From: Octopus sinensis
Taxonomy: Eukaryota
Direction: 5' to 3'
NCBI RefSeq assembly: GCF_006345805.1
Contig: NC_043009.1
Coordinates: 38,316,001 to 38,380,000, forward strand
DNA: 64,000 nt
Positions 32,462-63,570 of this stretch are shown in pieces. Positions within the stretch are counted from its first letter, which is position 1; every line of letters begins with the position of its first letter. The notes below the pieces were generated by a model. The model was not told the DNA's origin, made no database searches, and worked only from the letters and a program-made list of their open reading frames with translations. The translations under genes and the position numbers were made by a program.

Positions 32462-32719
32462 ACACAAAAACACACAAAAATATGCCCTCACACATTCTCT
32501 CTCTTTTTCTTACCCTCAAGGAATATGCAGAAAAAGCAGAAAGCTTGAAGAATTGCCAGGTAAATATTCTTGCTGTATGCGAAGTTCAAAAGACACTGAT
32601 CTAGGAATTACCTATATTCTTCTCCGAGGAATGTTATCAATAAAATAAGTAAAAAGAAAGTTTTATAACAACTGCAAATCACTTTTTGGATTCGGTACAC
32701 AGGATATACAATCTCAACG

Positions 32720-32734
32720 GGAATGATGATGATG

Positions 32735-32811
<77 letters not shown>

Positions 32812-32842
32812 AAAAATAAAAATAAAAGTAATAATAATAATA

Positions 32843-32884
<42 letters not shown>

Positions 32885-32981
32885 ATGATGATAATAAATA
32901 AAAATAAAAGTAATAATAATAATAATAATAATAATAATTGTAAATAATATAATAACAATAATAATAATGATAATAATAATA

Positions 32982-34074: not shown

Positions 34075-34507
34075 AAAGATGATGATGATGAGGAGGATAA
34101 AGGAGGATGATGAAGGTGATGATGATGATGATGGATGATGATGATGATGATGATGAAGGTGATGATGATGACGATGATGACGACGATGATGATAATGATG
34201 ATGATGATGATAACGATGACGGTGATGAAGCCAACAATGGGGACAACGCCAACAATGGCGACTACACCGACGCCGAAGATGATGACGACAACGACGATGA
34301 TGAAGACAACGATGACAACGACAACGATGATGATGATGATGATGATGACGATGCTGGCGATAACGACAACGACGAATAATGATGATTAACTTGATGACGA
34401 TGACGGTGTCTGATGATGATGATGATGATGATGATAATGAGGACGGTGATGAGAACGATCATGAAGATAAAGACGACGACGACGACGTTGGCGACAATGA
34501 TGATGAA

Positions 34508-34553
<46 letters not shown>

Positions 34554-34564
34554 GTGATGATGAA

Positions 34565-34648
<84 letters not shown>

Positions 34649-34742
34649 AACGACGTCGATGATGGCGATGATGATGATAACGAGGACGATGATGGCGATG
34701 ATAGTGATGATGAAAATGACGGCGATGATGATAATGATAACG
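34075..34742 (+). repeat. Long degenerate (GAT)n tract (poly-Asp in one frame)
   Basis: GAT with GAC/AAC/AAT/GGT/GGC/GAA variants. Frame shift near 34133 and in-frame TAA at 34377-34379. Confidence 0.9.
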
Positions 34743-35239
34743 TCATTCGAAGGCTAAAATCAATACCTTTATTTCACTACAATAGTGTGAGTGAGATAAA
34801 TAACAGGCAATATCTATAGATATCTGAAAAATGATCGGATATATTGCCTTGAGAACAGATTAAATACCACAGATTGACCGAGCGAACTGAGAACTTTGCT
34901 ACTAACAGGTAAATTATTTCTTCAGCTTTATAGAGAAAACGATATACAAACCATATGGTTGCATGTCTCGGCAATAAATGATTCCTTGACACAACTTCTC
35001 TTTCTTGATCAATGGAATGTTCATGGTTGGCAGCAGTAGCAGAGAAAATAGTCATCTGTTATCTGTATGAAGAATTTAATATAACTTTGGAAAGCAACAC
35101 TGTTTTAGGCGCCGAAAAGACAAAAGCGTTGTCATACGAATAATCTTTGGAAAAGATAGCGACATTATGAATAATATAATAGTTATAAAGTTAATGTTTG
35201 GTGTGGAAGTATAATTTATTATAAACATGTTTCAACAAA

Positions 35240-52289: not shown

Positions 52290-53660
52290 GTTGAAAGAAC
52301 TGTTGATATAATGGCGGCCGAAAAAAAGTCAGCGATCTGGAAGAAGCGTTACTGCACCGGACAAAATGCTGTCCAGAATTTCTTCTTCCTTTGGGTTCTG
52401 GGTTCAAATTCCTATTTCTTTACTACCAACAAGAGGCTAAATACAGAGGGGACGAACAAGGACAGACAAACGGATTAAGTCGATTATATCGACCCCAGTG
52501 CATAACTTGTACTTATTTAATCGACCCCGAAAGGATGAAAGGCAAAGTCGACCTCGGCGGAATTTGAACCCAGAACGTAGCGGTAGACAAAATACTGCTG
52601 AGCATTTCGCCCGACGTGCTAACGTTTCTGTCAGCTCGCCTGGGTTCAAATTCCATCGAGATCGAGTTCCTCTTTCATCCTTTTAAGATCGATAAAGTAC
52701 AAGTTGAGCACTGCAGTCGGTGTAATCAACTATCCCCTTCCCACGGAACTTCAGGACTTTAGCCTATTATTATGAAGGCGGCGAGCTGGCAGAAACGTTA
52801 GCACGCCGGGCGAAATGCTTAGCGGTGTTTCATCTGCCGCTACGTTCTGAGTTCAAATTCCGCCGAGGTCGACTTTGCCTTTCATCCTTTCGGGGTCGAT
52901 TAAATAAGTACAACTTATGCACTGGGGTCGATATAATCGACTTAATCCGTTTGTCTGTCCTTGTTTGTCCTCTCTGTGTTTAGCCCCTTGTGGGTAGTAA
53001 AGAAATAGGCATTTCTTCTGGCTCTTTAAAATCATGAGTTCGAATTCCATCGAGGTCGACATTGCTTTTCATCCTTTGGGGGTCGATAACTTAAGTACTA
53101 TTCGAGCACCGGGGTCAATGATATCGACTAGCCACCTCCTTCAAAATTTCAGACTTTGTGCCTATATTACGAAGACATTATTGCGAAAAATATGCGGTGA
53201 GCTAGTGGAGTTGATACGGCGCCGAATAAAATGTTTAGAAGCAATTCTTCCGGATCTTTACGTTCTGAGTTCCGATGTCACCGATGTCAATTTTGCCTTT
53301 TGTCGTTTCGGGGGCAATAAAATTAAGTACTATTAGAGCAGTGGGTCAAAGTACTCGATTCCCCACCCGTCACCTAAAGATGGTTAACTTTGTATCAAAA
53401 TAACAAAAAAAATTGTTTAGAAAAATCGAAAGGCAGAGAGCTGGTAGAATCGTTAGAGCATCAGGAAAATGCTGTGTGAAATTTCTTCCGGTCCTTTACG
53501 CTCTGAGTTCAAATCCCGTTGATGACAACTTCACTTTTCATCATCTCAGGATCAATAAAATAAAGCACCACTCAAGTACTGAGATTTGATGGGTTTGACT
53601 TATTTCCCTTTCCCTTAAAATTGCTGGCATCGTGCCTAAATTCGAAACCATTCTTATTAT
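52290..53660. mobile_element. Cluster of about six tRNA-SINE units, including an antisense nested tail-B copy
   Basis: Minus-strand B copy at 52413-52639 is flanked by a 15-bp duplication CTGGGTTCAAATTCC (52398-52412, 52640-52654). B-to-A junction at 53008. Confidence 0.9.
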
Positions 53661-54583: not shown

Positions 54584-54603
54584 TAATAATATAATAATAA
54601 TAA

Positions 54604-55289
54604 TGAAAAGAAATATTACAAGTAACTGCAGAATATGTGGAGATGGACAAGAAACAATAAATCATATTATCTCTAGCTGCCCAGTCCTGGCTAAGAAGGA
54701 ATATATTCACAGACTTGACAGAGTTGGAACCTACATACATTGGAAGCTATGCCAACATTATGGAATAACAACAGAAAAAAGATGGTATAGGCACACACCA
54801 GAAAAGGTCACAGAAAACGAGAAAGCAACCATACTCTGGGATATGCCGATACACACAGATAGAGAAATTAAGGCCAACAGACCAGATATAGTTGTCAGAG
54901 ATCATGAAGAAAAAAAATGCTTTCTAATTGATGTATCAATACCGGCAGATGACAACGTGTCTCTAAAAGAAATGGAGAAACTCTCAAAATACAAAGACCT
55001 GGAAATAGAGGTAACTAGAATGTGGAACCTGAAAACAGAAACAATTCCTATCATAGTAGGTGCATTAGGCATGATAAAAAATATTCAGACACATACATAA
55101 CAAAAACACCAGGACTTACAAACACATATAACATACAGAAAATTGCACTACTAGGCACTGCACACATCCTACGCAGAACACTTTCCATACAATAACCATC
55201 AGAGCATCACAACAAATCACAGCACATACCCAAGGCACACAGAGCTGCGCTCGGTAGTGAAGTGAAAGCACGCTATAAAAATAAAACTA

Positions 55290-57239: not shown

Positions 57240-58230
57240 AGGCTTCATTTTTGTATTGTTTTGGTGAAGTAGCGAGTTGGACGGAGCTACCCTTCTTTGC
57301 ACCTCCTGCTGCGATTTGGGTTCATTTGTCCTGGTGTTCTTTGAAGACCTAGTCATTTATAAATCGCAAATCTTTGAGTTTGTTTGACAGAATGTTGAAC
57401 AACTGTAGGCCCTTGAAACCGAAGCTGTTACAGTACTTGGCCTTTATTTGAGATGGAGAAGATGGGATCTTTGGTATTATGCAGTGGCGTCCAGTTCGGT
57501 GGTTGGTATAACTTTAAAAGGCGGCGAGCTGGCAGAAACGTCAGCACACCGGGCGAAATGCTTAGCGGTATTTCGTCTGCGTTACGTTGTGAGTTCAAAT
57601 TCCGCCGAGGTCGAGTTTGCCTTTCATCCTTTCGGGGTCGATAAATTATGTACCAGTTACGCACTGGGGTCGATGTAATCGACTTAATACCTATGTCTGT
57701 CCTTGTTTGTCCCTCTGTGTTTAGCCTCTTGTGGGTAATAAAGAAATAAGTATAACTTTAAATTCCAAAGTTGGGAGCTAGACTTTCCAGGATCTTCTAT
57801 CTGCATATCACTGTAAATCTTTCACACCTTCTCTCTAGGAGTAGAACTTCAGTTCCTATAGCCGTTCCCAGTAGCTCGTCTGTTTCACCCAGTTATTCTT
57901 CTTTATATCGCTGGATGCTTTAAGTTCCGCCGCCAGTTTGATGCTCAGCGGTGATCATAGTTGGAAGCAGTAATCCAGAAAATTGACAACGAACGTTCCC
58001 CAAAGGAGTAGCATAGTACTCTTTTTCGCGTTCTGAATGATCTCAGAATCCATCCAGATCATTCAATGCAGATCATACTTTTTTTCAGGAAGACTAGCAG
58101 TTTCTCGTGTATGAAAGTTTTTGCATGTCACCAATGTTTTATTCAAGGAAAACGACTCCACCTTCTGCCCATACACCTTGGTTCCAATGTTATCGCAAAC
58201 GGTACTATGAGAAAGCAAACGCCAGGAACA
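57240..58230 (-). pseudogene. Decayed CR1-like LINE 3' region, interrupted by a SINE
   Basis: Frameshifted minus-strand reading ELKFYS-LERRCERFTVICR*KILESLAPNFGI*SY, and after the SINE, TGRHCIIPKIP...YCNSFGFKGLQLFNIL, matching the CR1 ORF2 C-terminus pattern. Confidence 0.8.
57519..57749 (+). mobile_element. Tail-B tRNA SINE with a 13-bp TSD inside the CR1 remnant
   Basis: GTATAACTTTAAA at 57506-57518 and 57750-57762. Confidence 0.92.
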
Positions 58231-59167
58231 GGTTCTGCAAGGCACATTTCCTGACCTTTTACATTTCCGCTCGGGAATTTCTCTTAAGGCTAGTTACTTG
58301 GCTTCCATGGCGTATAAGTGTCCAATATCACAACATTGAACGGGACGTCGACTTGTTGTACTGTCAAAAGATCTGTGGATAAACCGATCGCATTAATCTT
58401 ATTACTTGACTGGTACGCTAGTTTATCGAGCCCAGGCGGTGTGACACGCAAAGTAGATCTCATTAGGATTTGAACTCTGAATGTAAGGAGCCGGAAGAAA
58501 TACTGCATTGCATTTTCCGACGTTCTAACAATTCCGCCAATAAACCAGCCTTCTTCAAACAGTAAAATAACAGCGGTCTTACCTTCTAATGTATAACTGT
58601 CTTTGTGTCAATCACTCAGGGAAAAGAATAAAGAAATCATGGATGTAGGAGGAAATGTAGAGGTGTGAGGTATTGTTATAGAAAACAATGGGGAATTATA
58701 TACTTGTCTTGGTTTTTAATTATTTTATTTCATAATGTTTGAACGGTGTTTTTAATACAATAGAATGTAAGTTTACTTTCTTATAATGGCATATATTTAT
58801 TTTGGGAGTGTATTTTAAATATAACTTTTATTGAAATGGATTATTGTATCTTTACTTTCTTACTGCGGCATACAATTGTTTTTGCGACGTATTTTAGACG
58901 TAGATTATATTAGAACGGATTATGATAAACCAAGATATATATTATCATCTCTAAATGTAGCCTTCGATATAAATTCTATTGAAATAGATTATGATCAATT
59001 GGGAATATATTGATCTTTCTATAGTATTTTGAGACGTAATAATTTTTAACGAAAGGTAATTTAATAATGTAAAAAATATTGGAATATTGATTAGGTTAAA
59101 TTTATATTCAAAATTTCAATTTAAATTCCAAAATTTTTTAAATGGTTCAAATTAAATTTTAGAAGCG

Positions 59168-59841
59168 GATATTCGATTGTAACGGCTGGCTGTGAACTTG
59201 TTAAAAATGGATAATTTGGTGAATTCGAAAAATTTGAATAATTCGTTGAAAACGGTTGCTTGTATAGGGTGTGTTGAATATGCTGTGCTTATTTGTAATA
59301 ATTTTGAAGGACTGCGGTGGGGAGCGAAAAAAATTGAGCGGAATAAAAACAATGAGAGAAGAAAAAGAATAGAAGTAAATGGAAACCATATATTAAAAAA
59401 CAAAACTCAAACACGAAAAAACTAAATACGCAGAAACCAATTCACTATTGTTTACCAAAAAAAAACAATACCTTTCACCTCTACTCAAGCGACTCCTCCT
59501 AGTTCCATAATTTCTCTTTGTTTTAGCTTGATTGATTGACAGAAAGACAGCTTTACGGTTCGAAGACGAGACGGCATTTTATGTAACTGCTCGAAGTGCT
59601 CCCCACAAAGTGAAACGTGTGTACAAGGTGCAGGCATGGGTGTGTGGTTAAGCAGCTTCTTTTGCAATTATGCGCTTTCGCGTTCAGTTTTACAACGCAG
59701 TACCTTGAACAAGTACCTTCAACTATAGCTCTTGGCTGACCAATTCCTTGTGAGAATTTTCATGTTGCTTACTGTTGGTGACGTCCTGTGCCCTGTATGC
59801 ATATGTATATGTATGTATGTATATATATGTATGCATGTATG
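59168..59841. repeat. Left arm of a 674-bp inverted duplication
   Basis: Reverse complement of 60939-61612. The only mismatch I found is 59621/61159. The ORF track shows the same peptides on opposite strands. Confidence 0.95.
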
Positions 59842-59844
59842 GTG

Positions 59845-60010
59845 AAAATCTTGCTTCCCAACCATATGGTTTCCAGTTCAGTCCCACTGTGTGACATCTT
59901 GGGCAAGTGTCTTCTACGATAGCCTCGGGCCGACCAAAGCCTTGTGAGTGGATTTGGTAGAGGGAAACCTAAAAAAGCCTGTCATATATATATGTATGCA
60001 TGCATGTATA

Positions 60011-60095
<85 letters not shown>

Positions 60096-60300
60096 TATAT
60101 ATATTTGTATGTATTTGTGTCTGTGTCTGTTCCACTACCATCATTTGTCGACCGATCTTGGTGTGTTTACAATCCCGTAGCTTAGCGGTTCCAGGCTTAC
60201 AAAGAATAAGTCCAGGCGTCGATTTCTTCGACCAAAAGGCGGTGCTCCAGCATGGCCACAGTCAGAATGACTGAAACAAGTAAAAGAATAAAAGAATATA
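59845..60300 (+). mobile_element. CORE-like tRNA SINE in the spacer of the inverted duplication
   Basis: CTTGCTTCCCAACCATATGG, ending GACTGAAACAAGTAAAAGAATAAAAGAATA. Confidence 0.85.
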
Positions 60301-60313
60301 TAAATATATCCTT

Positions 60314-60350
<37 letters not shown>

Positions 60351-60696
60351 TGATAGATAGATAGATAGATAGATAGATATTACCCGAAATATTAGCGCCA
60401 AGCAGTGTTTATGGATATGCAAAGTTCAAGTTAGTTGAAATATTTGTGTCATATTTGAACTGCTAAAGGCAAATTCACTGTAGTTTCCGCAGAGAGAAAT
60501 TTTCCCTTATGGTAAAAAGGTGTGAAAACACCCTATCTGTTCACTGTCGCCATCACTCAAGATTCCCAGACGTCGATGTTCCTAGCTCGTTGGCTTTTAT
60601 CAATGGGAATTACCTAGGAGATGTAACTCTGAACAGATCTTTTAACGCGACAGCTTTATGTAAAATATAGTCAACAACGTTGACTGAGTTGCGCTA

Positions 60697-60771
<75 letters not shown>

Positions 60772-60822
60772 GTATATATATATATATATGTATGTATGTA
60801 TATATATGTATATATATGTGTG

Positions 60823-60855
<33 letters not shown>

Positions 60856-60864
60856 GTATATATG

Positions 60865-60925
<61 letters not shown>

Positions 60926-60938
60926 TTATACATATATA

Positions 60939-61612
60939 CATACATGCATACATATATATACATACATACATATACATATGCATACAGGGCACAGGACGTC
61001 ACCAACAGTAAGCAACATGAAAATTCTCACAAGGAATTGGTCAGCCAAGAGCTATAGTTGAAGGTACTTGTTCAAGGTACTGCGTTGTAAAACTGAACGC
61101 GAAAGCGCATAATTGCAAAAGAAGCTGCTTAACCACACACCCATGCCTGCACCTTGTAAACACGTTTCACTTTGTGGGGAGCACTTCGAGCAGTTACATA
61201 AAATGCCGTCTCGTCTTCGAACCGTAAAGCTGTCTTTCTGTCAATCAATCAAGCTAAAACAAAGAGAAATTATGGAACTAGGAGGAGTCGCTTGAGTAGA
61301 GGTGAAAGGTATTGTTTTTTTTTGGTAAACAATAGTGAATTGGTTTCTGCGTATTTAGTTTTTTCGTGTTTGAGTTTTGTTTTTTAATATATGGTTTCCA
61401 TTTACTTCTATTCTTTTTCTTCTCTCATTGTTTTTATTCCGCTCAATTTTTTTCGCTCCCCACCGCAGTCCTTCAAAATTATTACAAATAAGCACAGCAT
61501 ATTCAACACACCCTATACAAGCAACCGTTTTCAACGAATTATTCAAATTTTTCGAATTCACCAAATTATCCATTTTTAACAAGTTCACAGCCAGCCGTTA
61601 CAATCGAATATC
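60939..61612. repeat. Right arm of the 674-bp inverted duplication
   Basis: Reverse complement of 59168-59841. Confidence 0.95.
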
Positions 61613-62974
61613 GCCTTCGCCGTGAACAGATATTAATCTTCTCCCTTCGCTCCTTTGTGCCACATGAGCTCAACTCCCCTCCTCTCTTCATCTGACACAT
61701 CGCTTCACACCTACCTATCTCCTCTCTTCATCAATACCTCCCTCATGTATGTGTATGTGCGTGTGTGTCAGTGTGTGTTCTTAATTATACGATCTACATA
61801 TCCTATAATTCAACATAGAAGTGATGCCACGTTTGACATATATGTTCCTTCATTACATTACGAATGACAACAAAGCAGATATTTATACATGCGTTAATGT
61901 ATGACAGCACTAACTGCTCATCATAGCTGAAAAAAGCCTAAATCTTCAAATGTACTGATTTGTGTGAACATATTTCTGCTCTGTTGCATTTCCTTTTTCT
62001 CTTAAACTATGGCTTACCCAGGATATATATTATATATTGTGTAGAGAACGAGGTCGTGTATTTAATATCCGTATATTTTACAACACAAAGCAAACAGCAA
62101 TTTATTTTGTTTACTCATCACTTTTAAAAGAAAATATCAACTTCCTATCTTCAAGACTTTTAAAGATCCTACTTCACACCTTCAAATAAGTTGGGAAACA
62201 CTCATGAAAATGCAACATAAAGGCAGCATCCAAATTTGCAGGAAATGGTTATTTTAAAGGGTGGAAAAAATATTGTTGTGATGAAGAATATTATGATATA
62301 TTATATATATACATATGCACAGACAAACACACACACACACACACACACATACACGCGTACACAAACACACAAACAAATTTAACGGTTTAACGGGCGGTAG
62401 ATGGGGTCGGATTCGCGCCAAAATTTACACTGGGTGGTAAAATGGGGTGGGCAATGGTGTGAGGAGGGTTGCAAGTCGCTCGGGGCTACCGTTTGGTTGC
62501 CATGGTGAGGAATATGGGAAAGATTGAGTTTTATGGGATAGACAGGTTCCGCTGTTTGAATAATGGTGGCTTTTCGTTTTGCTGCAAGGGTTAGAGGTGG
62601 TTATCTTTAATCTAATCTATAAAAGGAAGAAGGCGAACGTTGATACAAATTGGATTTTTATGCAAAAGGGGTCTAAATGGGGTTGGAAGGGGATTAAAAT
62701 TTACAGGAGGGAGTAACTTAAGGTGAGAAATTGATTGGGAAACGTTTTGGGGCGCTACAGATGTTGCTTTGCTGTGAAAACGGGGATTTTATTGATTTTG
62801 GGGGACACTTTGGGGTCTAGATTGGACACCTTTTGCCCGATTTCAATCAAATTTTCAACATGGTAAAGTGTAAGCGGATTTAAGCGCAGAAAATGGGTTC
62901 GAAATTTTGACAATTAAGGCTGGATTTAAGAAACAGAAAGGAAGCAACAGAAAGTAATAGCCACACCCTCACTC

Positions 62975-63570
62975 GTTTGTCTGTCCTTGTTTGTCCCCTC
63001 TATGTTTAGCCCCTTGTGGCAATAAAGAAATAAGAAACGTTAGCACGCCGGGCGAAATGCATAGCGGTATTTCGTCTGCCGCTACGTTGTGAGTTCAAAT
63101 TCCGCCGAGGTCGACTTTGCCTGTCATCCTTTCGGGGTCGATAAATTAAGTACCAGTTACGCCATGGGGTCGATATAATCGACCTAATCTGTTTGTCTGT
63201 CCTTGTTTGTCCTCTCTGTGTTTAGTCCCTTATAGGTAGTAAAGAAATAGGTATTTCGTCTGCCGCTACGTTCTGAGTTCAAATTCCGCCGAGGTTGACT
63301 TTGCCTTTCATCCTTTCGGGGGTCGATTAAATAAGTACCAGTTACGTACTGGGGTCGATATAATCGATCTAATCCGTTTGCCTGTCCTTGTTTGTATGCT
63401 CTGTGTTTAGCCACTTGTGGGCAGTAAGGAAATAAGAATCGTTAGCACGTCAGATAACATGCTTAGCGGTATTTCTTCCGCCACTTTACGATTTTCATTC
63501 CTTAGTGATCAATAAAAATAAGAAACTACCCAAGTACTTGGGTCGATATAATCGACATGTCCCCTTCCAC
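62975..63570 (+). mobile_element. Tandem tRNA-SINE array (truncated tail B, B, B, older A)
   Basis: Tail-B junctions to AGAAACGTTAGC (63033), GGTATTTCGTC (63250) and AGAATCGTTAGC (63435). Confidence 0.9.

What the first reader, a model, noticed from the sequence alone, without database searches (positions are those of the whole stretch)
59168..61612. 674-bp near-perfect inverted duplication around a 1097-bp spacer
The arms (59168-59841 and 60939-61612) differ at one position that I could find. They comprise unique sequence, an old SINE half and a microsatellite edge, so they are not ordinary TIRs and the event must be very recent. Just outside the outer ends, GAAGCG versus GAAGGC suggests microhomology-mediated template switching; the inner ends lie in TATG repeats. 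If transcribed through, this gives a very long dsRNA. That matters in coleoids, where ADAR editing is extensive, and it could also yield endo-siRNAs. It lies next to possible promoter signals at 62-64 kb.
Basis: partly seen in the sequence, partly recalled or inferred. Interest (0 to 1): 0.7.

Follow-up and report, generated by a model that had tools for sequence, protein, structure and literature searches.

The report
Small inversion flanked by inverted duplication
Two 674-base copies of ordinary non-coding DNA face each other across a 1.1-kb spacer, most likely the scar of one recent rearrangement that flipped the spacer and copied one flank; no function is shown.

Summary
Arms 59168-59841 and 60939-61612 are reverse complements over 674 nt with one mismatch (59621 G against 61159). 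The spacer is 1097 nt. No other repeat pair in the window exceeds about 95% identity.

Each arm is a mosaic of low-copy DNA, a decayed SINE head and a TATG microsatellite. There is no target-site duplication and no other copy in the window, so this is not a transposon with terminal repeats.

New here: the spacer begins at 59842 with a younger SINE that starts exactly at consensus position 22. That SINE's 5' terminus (GGCGAAGGC, 8/9 to consensus) lies on the opposite strand at 61613-61621, directly against arm B's outer end. One element split into two opposite-facing halves at two junctions is the signature of an inversion.

My best model is a single event that inverted about 1.1 kb and duplicated one 674-bp flank. 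This would arise by two template switches or by staggered breaks, with short homeology at both new junctions.

A transcript through the locus would fold into a roughly 677-bp duplex. Transcription could not be tested. Published surveys find no endo-siRNA pathway in molluscs. No independent sequence of the locus could be found, so an assembly artefact is unlikely but not excluded. This is a known kind of mutation, of low to moderate interest.

The parts
58553..58757 (+). Old, 66%-identical paralogue of an internal arm segment. It matches 61184-61389 in the same orientation as arm B and 59391-59596 in inverted orientation. It shows that part of the arm belongs to an old repeat.
   Evidence: blastn, (214-nt alignment, E about 1e-19); also seen
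59162..59167 (+). Left flank GAAGCG. It shares GAAG with the reverse complement of the right flank (GAAGGC). This is possible 4-nt microhomology for the return switch.
59168..59841 (+). Arm A (674 nt). 59168-59625 is low-copy DNA. 59626 to about 59795 is a decayed SINE head with its 5' end at 59626, 73% identical to the consensus. 59796-59841 is TATG microsatellite. Under the best model this is the parental copy.
59621..59621 (+). The only internal mismatch between the arms: G here, and T in the reverse complement of 61159.
59831..59841 (+). Last 11 nt of arm A, ATGCATGTATG. They match SINE consensus positions 11-21 (ATGGCTGTGTG) at 8/11. This is the proposed homeology used for the first template switch or join.
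   Evidence: The actual junction scores 129.1 bits against 119 for non-microsatellite joins, and only 2.8% of TATG-microsatellite controls reach that score.
59842..60313 (+). Younger SINE copy that starts exactly at consensus position 22 (88.6% identical). The head is 59842-59983, the internal TA/CA microsatellite is 59984-60100 and the tail is 60100-60313.
60314..60379 (+). (TAGA)n microsatellite inside the spacer.
60380..60697 (.). Single-copy part of the spacer. It has no SINE similarity on either strand.
60698..60938 (.). Long (TA)n/(TATG)n tract at the end of the spacer. It runs without a break into arm B's microsatellite. It is a candidate site of fork stalling or breakage.
   Evidence: the array spans 60698-60979
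60939..61612 (-). Arm B (674 nt), the reverse complement of arm A. Under the best model this is the derived copy.
61613..61621 (-). Orphan SINE 5' terminus GGCGAAGGC (minus strand), 8/9 to consensus positions 2-10. It directly abuts arm B's outer end and faces away from the SINE body at 59842.
   Evidence: In 128 kb of both strands there are only 5 matches within one mismatch: 3 true SINE 5' ends, 1 stray match and this one.

Best explanation
The locus is the product of one structural mutation in non-coding, repeat-rich DNA. I infer the ancestral order as: left flank, arm A, M (the reverse complement of today's spacer), right flank. In that order a full-length SINE on the minus strand ended with its 5' terminus at what is now 61613-61621.

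The proposed event runs as follows. Replication moving rightwards through arm A stalled at the start of the long TATG/(TA)n tract. The nascent end (ATGCATGTATG) annealed to the similar stretch of the SINE about 1.1 kb ahead on the opposite strand (ATGGCTGTGTG, 8/11). Synthesis then ran backwards, copying the spacer and arm A in reverse complement. It returned to the original template at the right flank, where the two sequences share GAAG.

The result is an inverted 1.1-kb spacer flanked by a 674-bp inverted duplication. In the four-point template-switch model this is event type 3-1-2-4. Staggered breaks followed by fill-in and end joining give the same product.

What is shown and what is inferred:
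- Shown: the repeat itself, its mosaic content, the split SINE, the homeologies and the predicted fold.
- Inferred: the ancestral order, the direction of copying, and the choice between a replicative and a breakage route.

No function is indicated. If an RNA polymerase reads through, the transcript would form a roughly 677-bp near-perfect duplex, which is a possible ADAR substrate. The arms could also mediate further inversions of the spacer.
For: - The arms are 674 nt with one mismatch and sharp boundaries on all four sides.
- Each arm contains a decayed SINE head (73% to consensus) and microsatellite. The duplicated unit is therefore ordinary local DNA, copied long after the SINE decayed.
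- The SINE body starts exactly at the A|spacer junction, at consensus position 22.
- The matching 5' terminus GGCGAAGGC sits on the opposite strand exactly at the B|right-flank junction. Such 9-mers are otherwise almost confined to real SINE 5' ends in the window.
- The 11 'missing' SINE bases resemble arm A's last 11 nt at 8/11 and in register.
- The microsatellite is continuous across the spacer|B junction, as expected if that junction is ancestral.
- The known classes fit. Inversions with inverted breakpoint duplications of 46 bp to 1.9 kb, often at one breakpoint only, are described in PMC1885836. Type 3-1-2-4 events that create an inverted repeat plus an inverted spacer are described in PMC5453318.
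Against: - No ancestral, allelic or orthologous sequence was available, so the inversion of the spacer rests on one 9-mer and its placement.
- The inference is post hoc. After allowing for the places I would have accepted, I estimate p at roughly 0.001-0.02.
- GCGAAGG occurs a second time 30 nt further into the right flank (minus strand, 61644-61650). The motif may therefore be native to that flank.
- SINE copies of this family with 5' ends worn into microsatellites are common in the window. The A|spacer junction could therefore be ancestral.
- TATG microsatellites in the right register score nearly as well as the actual junction.
- Target-site duplications of the young SINE did not discriminate between the models.
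- Documented template-switch mutations of this type are tens of bp long, not 1.8 kb.
Confidence: 0.55

Rival explanations
1. A plain inverted duplication without inversion. One arm was copied in reverse complement and inserted 1.1 kb away, either A between the left flank and the spacer or B between the spacer and the right flank. This would be a two-switch template-switch event of type 3-2-1-4. The spacer keeps its ancestral orientation.
For: - It gives the same product as far as the arms go.
- 5'-eroded SINE copies next to microsatellites are frequent in this window, so the A|spacer junction may be original.
- The actual A|spacer join is the best continuation of the SINE profile: 129-144 bits against 119-132 for the artificial joins.
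- This event type is at least as common as the inverting type in human and chimpanzee: 31% against 23% (PMC5453318).
Against: - It leaves the SINE 5' terminus at 61613-61621 as a coincidence, although that terminus sits exactly at the arm boundary and in opposite orientation to a SINE body lacking just that end.
- It does not explain why the truncation point (position 22) and the orphan piece (positions 2-10) fit together with an 11-nt gap that resembles the arm's end.
Confidence: 0.25
2. An assembly or library artefact. On this reading the second arm, or the junctions, come from chimeric long reads or a mis-join, and the genome holds only one copy of the arm.
For: - Near-identity of the arms.
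- Both inner ends lie in microsatellite, where aligners and assemblers fail.
- No independent sequence of the locus was found to contradict this reading.
Against: - Fold-back chimeras give palindromes with no spacer that run on to the read end. Here the arms have four sharp boundaries, two different unique outer flanks and a 1097-nt unique spacer.
- Two separate false junctions would have to survive consensus.
- There are no Ns or gaps in the window.
- One arm difference is present.
- My own graph argument shows that merging two haplotypes that differ by a simple inversion cannot create the A|spacer junction.
Confidence: 0.1
3. An older palindrome-like structure whose arms are kept nearly identical by gene conversion. 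It may also flip its spacer repeatedly by recombination between the arms. On this reading it is not a recent event.
For: - Arms 674 bp long at 99.85% identity are good substrates for intrachromosomal recombination and conversion. This rests on general knowledge of inverted repeats.
- An older 66% paralogue of part of the arm lies 400 bp to the left. This hints that the region has been rearranged before.
Against: - The boundaries are sharp to the base, with no zone of decaying similarity outside the arms. An old duplication homogenised only in its core would show such a zone.
- Conversion tracts would have to cover the whole 674 nt.
Confidence: 0.07
4. A foldback or other terminal-inverted-repeat transposon, or a pair of identical transposon insertions in opposite orientation.
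For: Long inverted terminal arms around a non-repeated centre resemble foldback elements.
Against: - There is no target-site duplication at either candidate boundary.
- The arm sequence has no further copy in 64 kb.
- The arms consist of a decayed SINE head, a microsatellite and low-copy DNA, not element-specific termini.
- There are no transposase-like ORFs in the spacer.
Confidence: 0.03

Closest known systems
Template-switch mutation of type 3-1-2-4 in the four-point model (Löytynoja & Goldman 2017, PMC5453318)
   Same: [quoted passage not shown] The switch points show short homology. The product can fold into a perfect hairpin.
   Different: Documented cases are tens of bp long. Here the reverse-copied fragment is about 1.77 kb (1097 + 674). 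[quoted passage not shown]
Inversions flanked by inverted duplications of breakpoint sequence, the staggered-break model (Ranz et al. 2007, PMC1885836)
   Same: Sequence that was single-copy in the ancestor is duplicated in inverted orientation at the two ends of an inverted segment. Often only one breakpoint region is duplicated. The duplication sizes reported are 46 bp to 1.9 kb with a median of 321 bp, and 674 bp fits that range.
   Different: Those are chromosomal inversions fixed between Drosophila species, and their duplicates are now about 88% identical. Here only about 1.1 kb is inverted and the copies are 99.85% identical.
Fold-back inverted duplications after double-strand breaks, and the ODIRA model (PMC10622511, PMC10766183)
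   Same: An inverted duplication with a single-copy spacer, primed at short inverted homology.
   Different: I did not read these papers beyond their titles and abstracts. Those events give large terminal or amplified rearrangements, dicentric chromosomes or extrachromosomal DNA. This locus is a small interstitial change with normal sequence on both sides.
Hairpin RNA (hpRNA) loci and inverted SINE pairs as ADAR substrates
   Same: A long intramolecular duplex is predicted if the locus is transcribed. Across metazoans, editing correlates with dsRNA abundance (title of PMC5625713; the paper was not read).
   Different: There is no evidence of transcription, editing or small RNAs here. Molluscs appear to lack a dedicated siRNA pathway (PMC12479628). 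The arms match no gene.

Membership tests
Template-switch mutation, type 3-1-2-4 (four-point model) | [quoted passage not shown] | tested here: met
   The arms are 674 nt with one mismatch and lie 1097 nt apart.
Template-switch mutation, type 3-1-2-4 (four-point model) | The spacer between the repeat arms is inverted relative to the ancestral sequence. | tested here: inconclusive
   The split SINE supports this: the body starts at 59842 on the plus strand from position 22, and the 5' terminus lies at 61613-61621 on the minus strand. No ancestral sequence was available.
Template-switch mutation, type 3-1-2-4 (four-point model) | A closely related reference sequence lacks the change. | not testable with these tools
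   No related locus was found in any accessible collection.
Template-switch mutation, type 3-1-2-4 (four-point model) | Short range, with fragments of tens of bp as described. | tested here: not met
   The reverse-copied fragment would be about 1771 nt. The scale is closer to FoSTeS/MMBIR events.
Inversion with inverted breakpoint duplication (staggered breaks) | Inverted duplicates of non-transposon, ancestrally single-copy sequence flank the inverted segment. | tested here: met
   The arms are a local mosaic with no other copy in the window.
Inversion with inverted breakpoint duplication (staggered breaks) | The duplication size falls within the reported range of 46 bp to 1.9 kb. | tested here: met
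   674 bp here, against the range given in PMC1885836.
Inversion with inverted breakpoint duplication (staggered breaks) | The segment is shown to be inverted by comparison with an outgroup. | not testable with these tools
   No outgroup sequence was available. The only evidence is the internal split-SINE argument.
Foldback / terminal-inverted-repeat transposon | Target-site duplication flanking the element. | tested here: not met
   No direct repeat of 6 nt or more occurs at either candidate pair of boundaries.
Foldback / terminal-inverted-repeat transposon | Multiple copies in the genome. | tested here: inconclusive
   There is none in the 64-kb window. The rest of the genome could not be searched.
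Hairpin-RNA / endo-siRNA locus | A long inverted repeat able to fold into an intramolecular duplex. | tested here: met
   MFE is -1606 kcal/mol on the plus strand and -1548 on the minus strand, with 677 and 676 in-register arm pairs. Shuffled sequences give about -550.
Hairpin-RNA / endo-siRNA locus | The locus is transcribed through both arms and yields 21-22-nt small RNAs. | not testable with these tools
   No RNA data were available. The literature reports no dedicated siRNA pathway in molluscs (PMC12479628).
ADAR hyper-editing substrate | Clusters of A-to-G mismatches in RNA reads over the arms. | not testable with these tools
   No RNA-seq data could be accessed.
Fold-back chimera / assembly artefact | A palindrome with no spacer, or only an adapter-sized one, running to a read or contig end or lying next to gaps. 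| tested here: not met
   The spacer is 1097 nt and unique, the two outer flanks are different unique sequences, and the window contains no Ns.
Fold-back chimera / assembly artefact | No raw reads span both arms. | not testable with these tools

The most novel reading that the evidence does not exclude
The locus is transcribed, for example as part of an intron or a long non-coding RNA. Its roughly 677-bp near-perfect hairpin would then be a newly born, heavily A-to-I-edited dsRNA in a cephalopod. It could act as an ADAR sink or an innate-immune trigger and be visible to selection. It would be a kilobase-scale example of template switching creating a structured RNA in one step.
Probability: 0.05. 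Interest if true: 0.6.

Novelty: new member of a known kind. Interest (0 to 1): 0.3.

Why it matters
If the inversion-plus-duplication model is right, this is a clean and very young example of a two-switch or staggered-break rearrangement. Its size lies between the tens-of-bp template-switch mutations known from primates and the megabase inversions known from flies.

Both junctions are still readable, so it could help show that these are one mechanism acting across scales. It also shows how a long, perfect hairpin-forming locus can arise in one step in a genome where RNA editing depends on double-stranded RNA.

For the organism itself it is most likely a neutral structural variant in repeat-rich non-coding DNA.

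Tried and rejected
1. Independent sequence of the locus.
- Exact look-ups of four window ORFs found nothing: two that cross the outer junctions and two within 5 kb of the arms.
- A homology search with the junction-crossing ORF found nothing.
- A 612-aa concatenation of nine ORFs from both flanks, the arms and the spacer also found nothing.
- Two metagenome scans with 20-mers from the arm and the spacer gave nothing or one hit. That hit is a chance 20-mer in a 60%-GC bacterial contig.

2. Deciding which arm is parental from the old SINE's tail. A profile search found no tail on either strand of 60380-60697, so this was uninformative.

3. Target-site duplications of the young SINE under three junction models. 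All three alignments were weak, with scores of 13-16.

4. Rfam. The only hits were sub-threshold microsatellite-driven miRNA-family matches (mir-297, mir-466 and similar). They are far below the gathering scores and I rejected them.

5. ARAGORN found no tRNA-like genes in the window.

6. Species identification.
- A LINE-derived ORF (54603-55100) has its best relatives in an unnamed NCBI assembly (GCA_024449705.1) and in a Logan run (SRR7158634).
- A literature search for those accessions found nothing useful.
No tool confirmed it.

7. A polarity flip of the microsatellite near 60926 was considered as a breakpoint marker. I rejected it because the young SINE's own internal microsatellite shows similar flips.

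Full report
**1. The observation**

The repeat finder reports one outstanding inverted pair, 59162-59841 against 60939-61618. It is 680 nt long with 1097 nt between the arms.

A base-by-base comparison shows three differences:
- Two are adjacent at the outermost tip: 59166-59167 CG against GC.
- One is internal: 59621 G against T in the reverse complement of 61159.

Similarity stops abruptly outside them.

In a self-comparison of the whole window this pair stands alone at 99.85% identity. Every other repeat pair is a SINE copy at 95% identity or less and 420 nt or shorter. The feature is real in the sequence and cannot be chance.

**2. What the pieces are**

I built a profile from other copies of a SINE family in the window. 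Its 5' consensus is AGGCGCAGGCATGGCTGTGTGGTAAGAAGCTTGCTTCCCAACC. This gives the following map.

| Region | Coordinates | Content |
|---|---|---|
| Arm, outer part | 59168-59625 | DNA with no other copy in the window, except as noted below |
| Arm, middle | 59626 to about 59795 | Decayed SINE head, 73% identical to consensus, complete at its 5' end |
| Arm, inner end | 59796-59841 | TATG microsatellite |
| Spacer, start | 59842-60313 | Younger copy of the same SINE (88.6% identical), beginning exactly at consensus position 22 |
| Spacer | 60314-60379 | (TAGA)n |
| Spacer | 60380-60697 | 318 nt of single-copy DNA |
| Spacer, end | 60698-60938 | Long (TA)n/(TATG)n tract that runs straight into arm B |

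The exception in the outer part is 59391-59596. It has an old 66% paralogue at 58553-58757.

The duplicated unit is therefore a slice of ordinary local 'junk' DNA. It was copied long after its SINE had decayed.

Three findings argue against a transposon with terminal inverted repeats:
- There is no target-site duplication at either candidate boundary.
- No transposase-like ORF lies in the spacer.
- The arm has no further copy in the window.

**3. A split SINE points to an inversion**

The right flank begins at 61613 with GCCTTCGCC. Its reverse complement, GGCGAAGGC, matches the 5' terminus of the SINE family (positions 2-10) at 8 of 9 bases.

In the 128 kb of both strands, 9-mers within one mismatch of GGCGCAGGC occur only five times:
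- Three are genuine SINE 5' ends.
- One is a stray match.
- The fifth is this one. It lies exactly against arm B's outer end, on the strand opposite to the 5'-truncated SINE body that starts exactly at arm A's inner end.

The 11 consensus bases between the two pieces are ATGGCTGTGTG. They resemble the last 11 bases of arm A (ATGCATGTATG) at 8 of 11, in register.

One element split into two opposite-facing halves at two junctions is the classical mark of an inversion whose breakpoint lay inside that element.

This gives a specific model. The ancestral order was left flank, arm A, reverse complement of the spacer, right flank. The two new junctions are A|spacer (59841/59842) and B|right flank (61612/61613). 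The junctions left flank|A and spacer|B are ancestral. The unbroken microsatellite across 60938/60939 agrees with that.

**4. How strong is that inference?**

Profile scoring of artificial joins gave mixed support.

| Join tested | Score (bits) |
|---|---|
| Actual A|spacer join | 129.1 |
| Left flank + spacer | about 119 |
| Reverse complement of right flank + spacer | about 119 |
| TATG microsatellite controls + spacer | mean 124; 2.8% reach 129 |

The last bases of arm A are therefore in register with the SINE. This may reflect either true continuity or microhomology at a new join.

Several SINE copies in the window have 5' ends worn into microsatellites. The A|spacer junction could therefore be ancestral.

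The right flank also contains GCGAAGG a second time 30 nt further in, so the motif may be native to that flank.

Target-site duplications of the young SINE did not discriminate between the models.

After allowing for the places where I would have accepted a match, I put the chance probability of the 9-mer's placement at roughly 0.001-0.02. I rank the models as follows:
- Inversion plus flank duplication: 0.55
- Plain inverted duplication: 0.25
- Assembly artefact: 0.10
- Conversion-maintained older palindrome: 0.07
- Transposon: 0.03

**5. Mechanism**

Two known routes give exactly this product.

The first is replicative, with two template switches. [quoted passage not shown] This type made up 23% of events between human and chimpanzee (PMC5453318). 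The inferred steps are:
- The nascent strand stalls on entering the roughly 290-bp TATG/(TA)n tract.
- It anneals through 8/11 homeology to the SINE about 1.1 kb ahead on the other strand.
- It copies back through the spacer and arm A.
- It returns to the right flank, where rc(left flank) CGCTTC and right flank GCCTTC share CTTC.

The second route is staggered single-strand or chromatid breaks, followed by fill-in and end joining. This was proposed for the 59% of Drosophila inversions that carry inverted duplications of breakpoint sequence. Those duplications range from 46 bp to 1.9 kb with a median of 321 bp, and often only one breakpoint is duplicated (PMC1885836).

The sequence alone does not separate these routes. 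The homeologies at both new junctions favour an annealing-dependent process.

**6. Age**

One difference in 674 nt is 0.15%. The Poisson 95% range is about 0.004-0.8%. This is far younger than the split SINE, which is 11% from its consensus, and the old SINE, which is 27% from its consensus.

With an assumed neutral rate of a few times 10^-9 per site per year, this corresponds to the order of 10^5 years. That rate is my assumption and was not computed here. The uncertainty is wide, and the variant may still be polymorphic. Gene conversion between the arms could make it look younger than it is.

**7. Consequences**

If a transcript runs through the locus, either strand folds with 676-677 in-register arm pairs. 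The MFE is -1606 or -1548 kcal/mol, against about -550 for shuffled sequence. That would be an obvious ADAR substrate.

Nothing available here shows transcription. Endo-siRNA production is unlikely. A survey of 32 molluscs, including Octopus bimaculoides, found no siRNA-type Argonaute or Dicer and no Dicer-signature small RNAs (PMC12479628).

Rfam gave only sub-threshold, microsatellite-driven hits.

**8. Artefact check**

Several features argue against a fold-back chimera or a simple mis-join:
- The arms have four sharp boundaries.
- The two outer flanks are different unique sequences.
- The spacer is unique and 1097 nt long.
- The window contains no gaps.

By my own graph argument, merging two haplotypes that differ by a simple inversion cannot create the A|spacer junction.

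I could not obtain any independent sequence of the locus. All ORF look-ups, two homology searches and two metagenome scans were empty or gave chance hits. Read-level confirmation remains the decisive missing step.

**9. Verdict**

- No function was found.
- This is a new member of a known kind of structural mutation, of low to moderate interest.

Noticed in passing
window 58553-58757: An old 66%-identical copy of an internal arm segment (it matches 61184-61389) lies about 400 bp left of arm A, next to a fragment of a second SINE family at 58380-58539. Part of the arm therefore belongs to an uncharacterised old repeat, or the region was rearranged before.
   Followed up: partly
window 58766-58923: Two tandem copies of a 79-nt AT-rich unit (71% identical) lie just left of the structure.
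   Followed up: no
window 62974-63489 and 57519-57753: Three tandem partial copies of a second abundant SINE family (GGCGGCGAGCTGGCAGAAACGT…type) lie right of the locus, and one copy lies left of it.
   Followed up: partly
window 52406-52640 and 52780-53014: An inverted pair of second-family SINE copies, 235 nt long, 93% identical and about 140 nt apart. This is a more ordinary potential dsRNA-forming pair in the same window.
   Followed up: no
window 7638, 35730, 41861 (SINE 5' ends): Several copies of the first SINE family have their first 10-15 bases replaced by, or merged into, TA/TG/CA microsatellites. This affects how 5'-truncated copies should be read.
   Followed up: partly
window 54603-55100 (+): A 165-aa ORF carries a weak zf-RVT match (reverse-transcriptase zinc-binding region) and has hundreds of relatives in marine invertebrate assemblies. 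The best are 91% (Logan SRR7158634) and 82% (GCA_024449705.1). It is a LINE remnant.
   Followed up: partly
window 61614-61620 and 61644-61650: The 7-mer CCTTCGC (GCGAAGG on the minus strand) occurs twice within 37 nt of the right flank. This weakens the argument that the first occurrence is SINE-derived.
   Followed up: no
window 34379-34819 and 32608-32958: Long trinucleotide-type low-complexity tracts give spurious ORFs (poly-Asp/Glu and poly-Ile/Leu).
   Followed up: no
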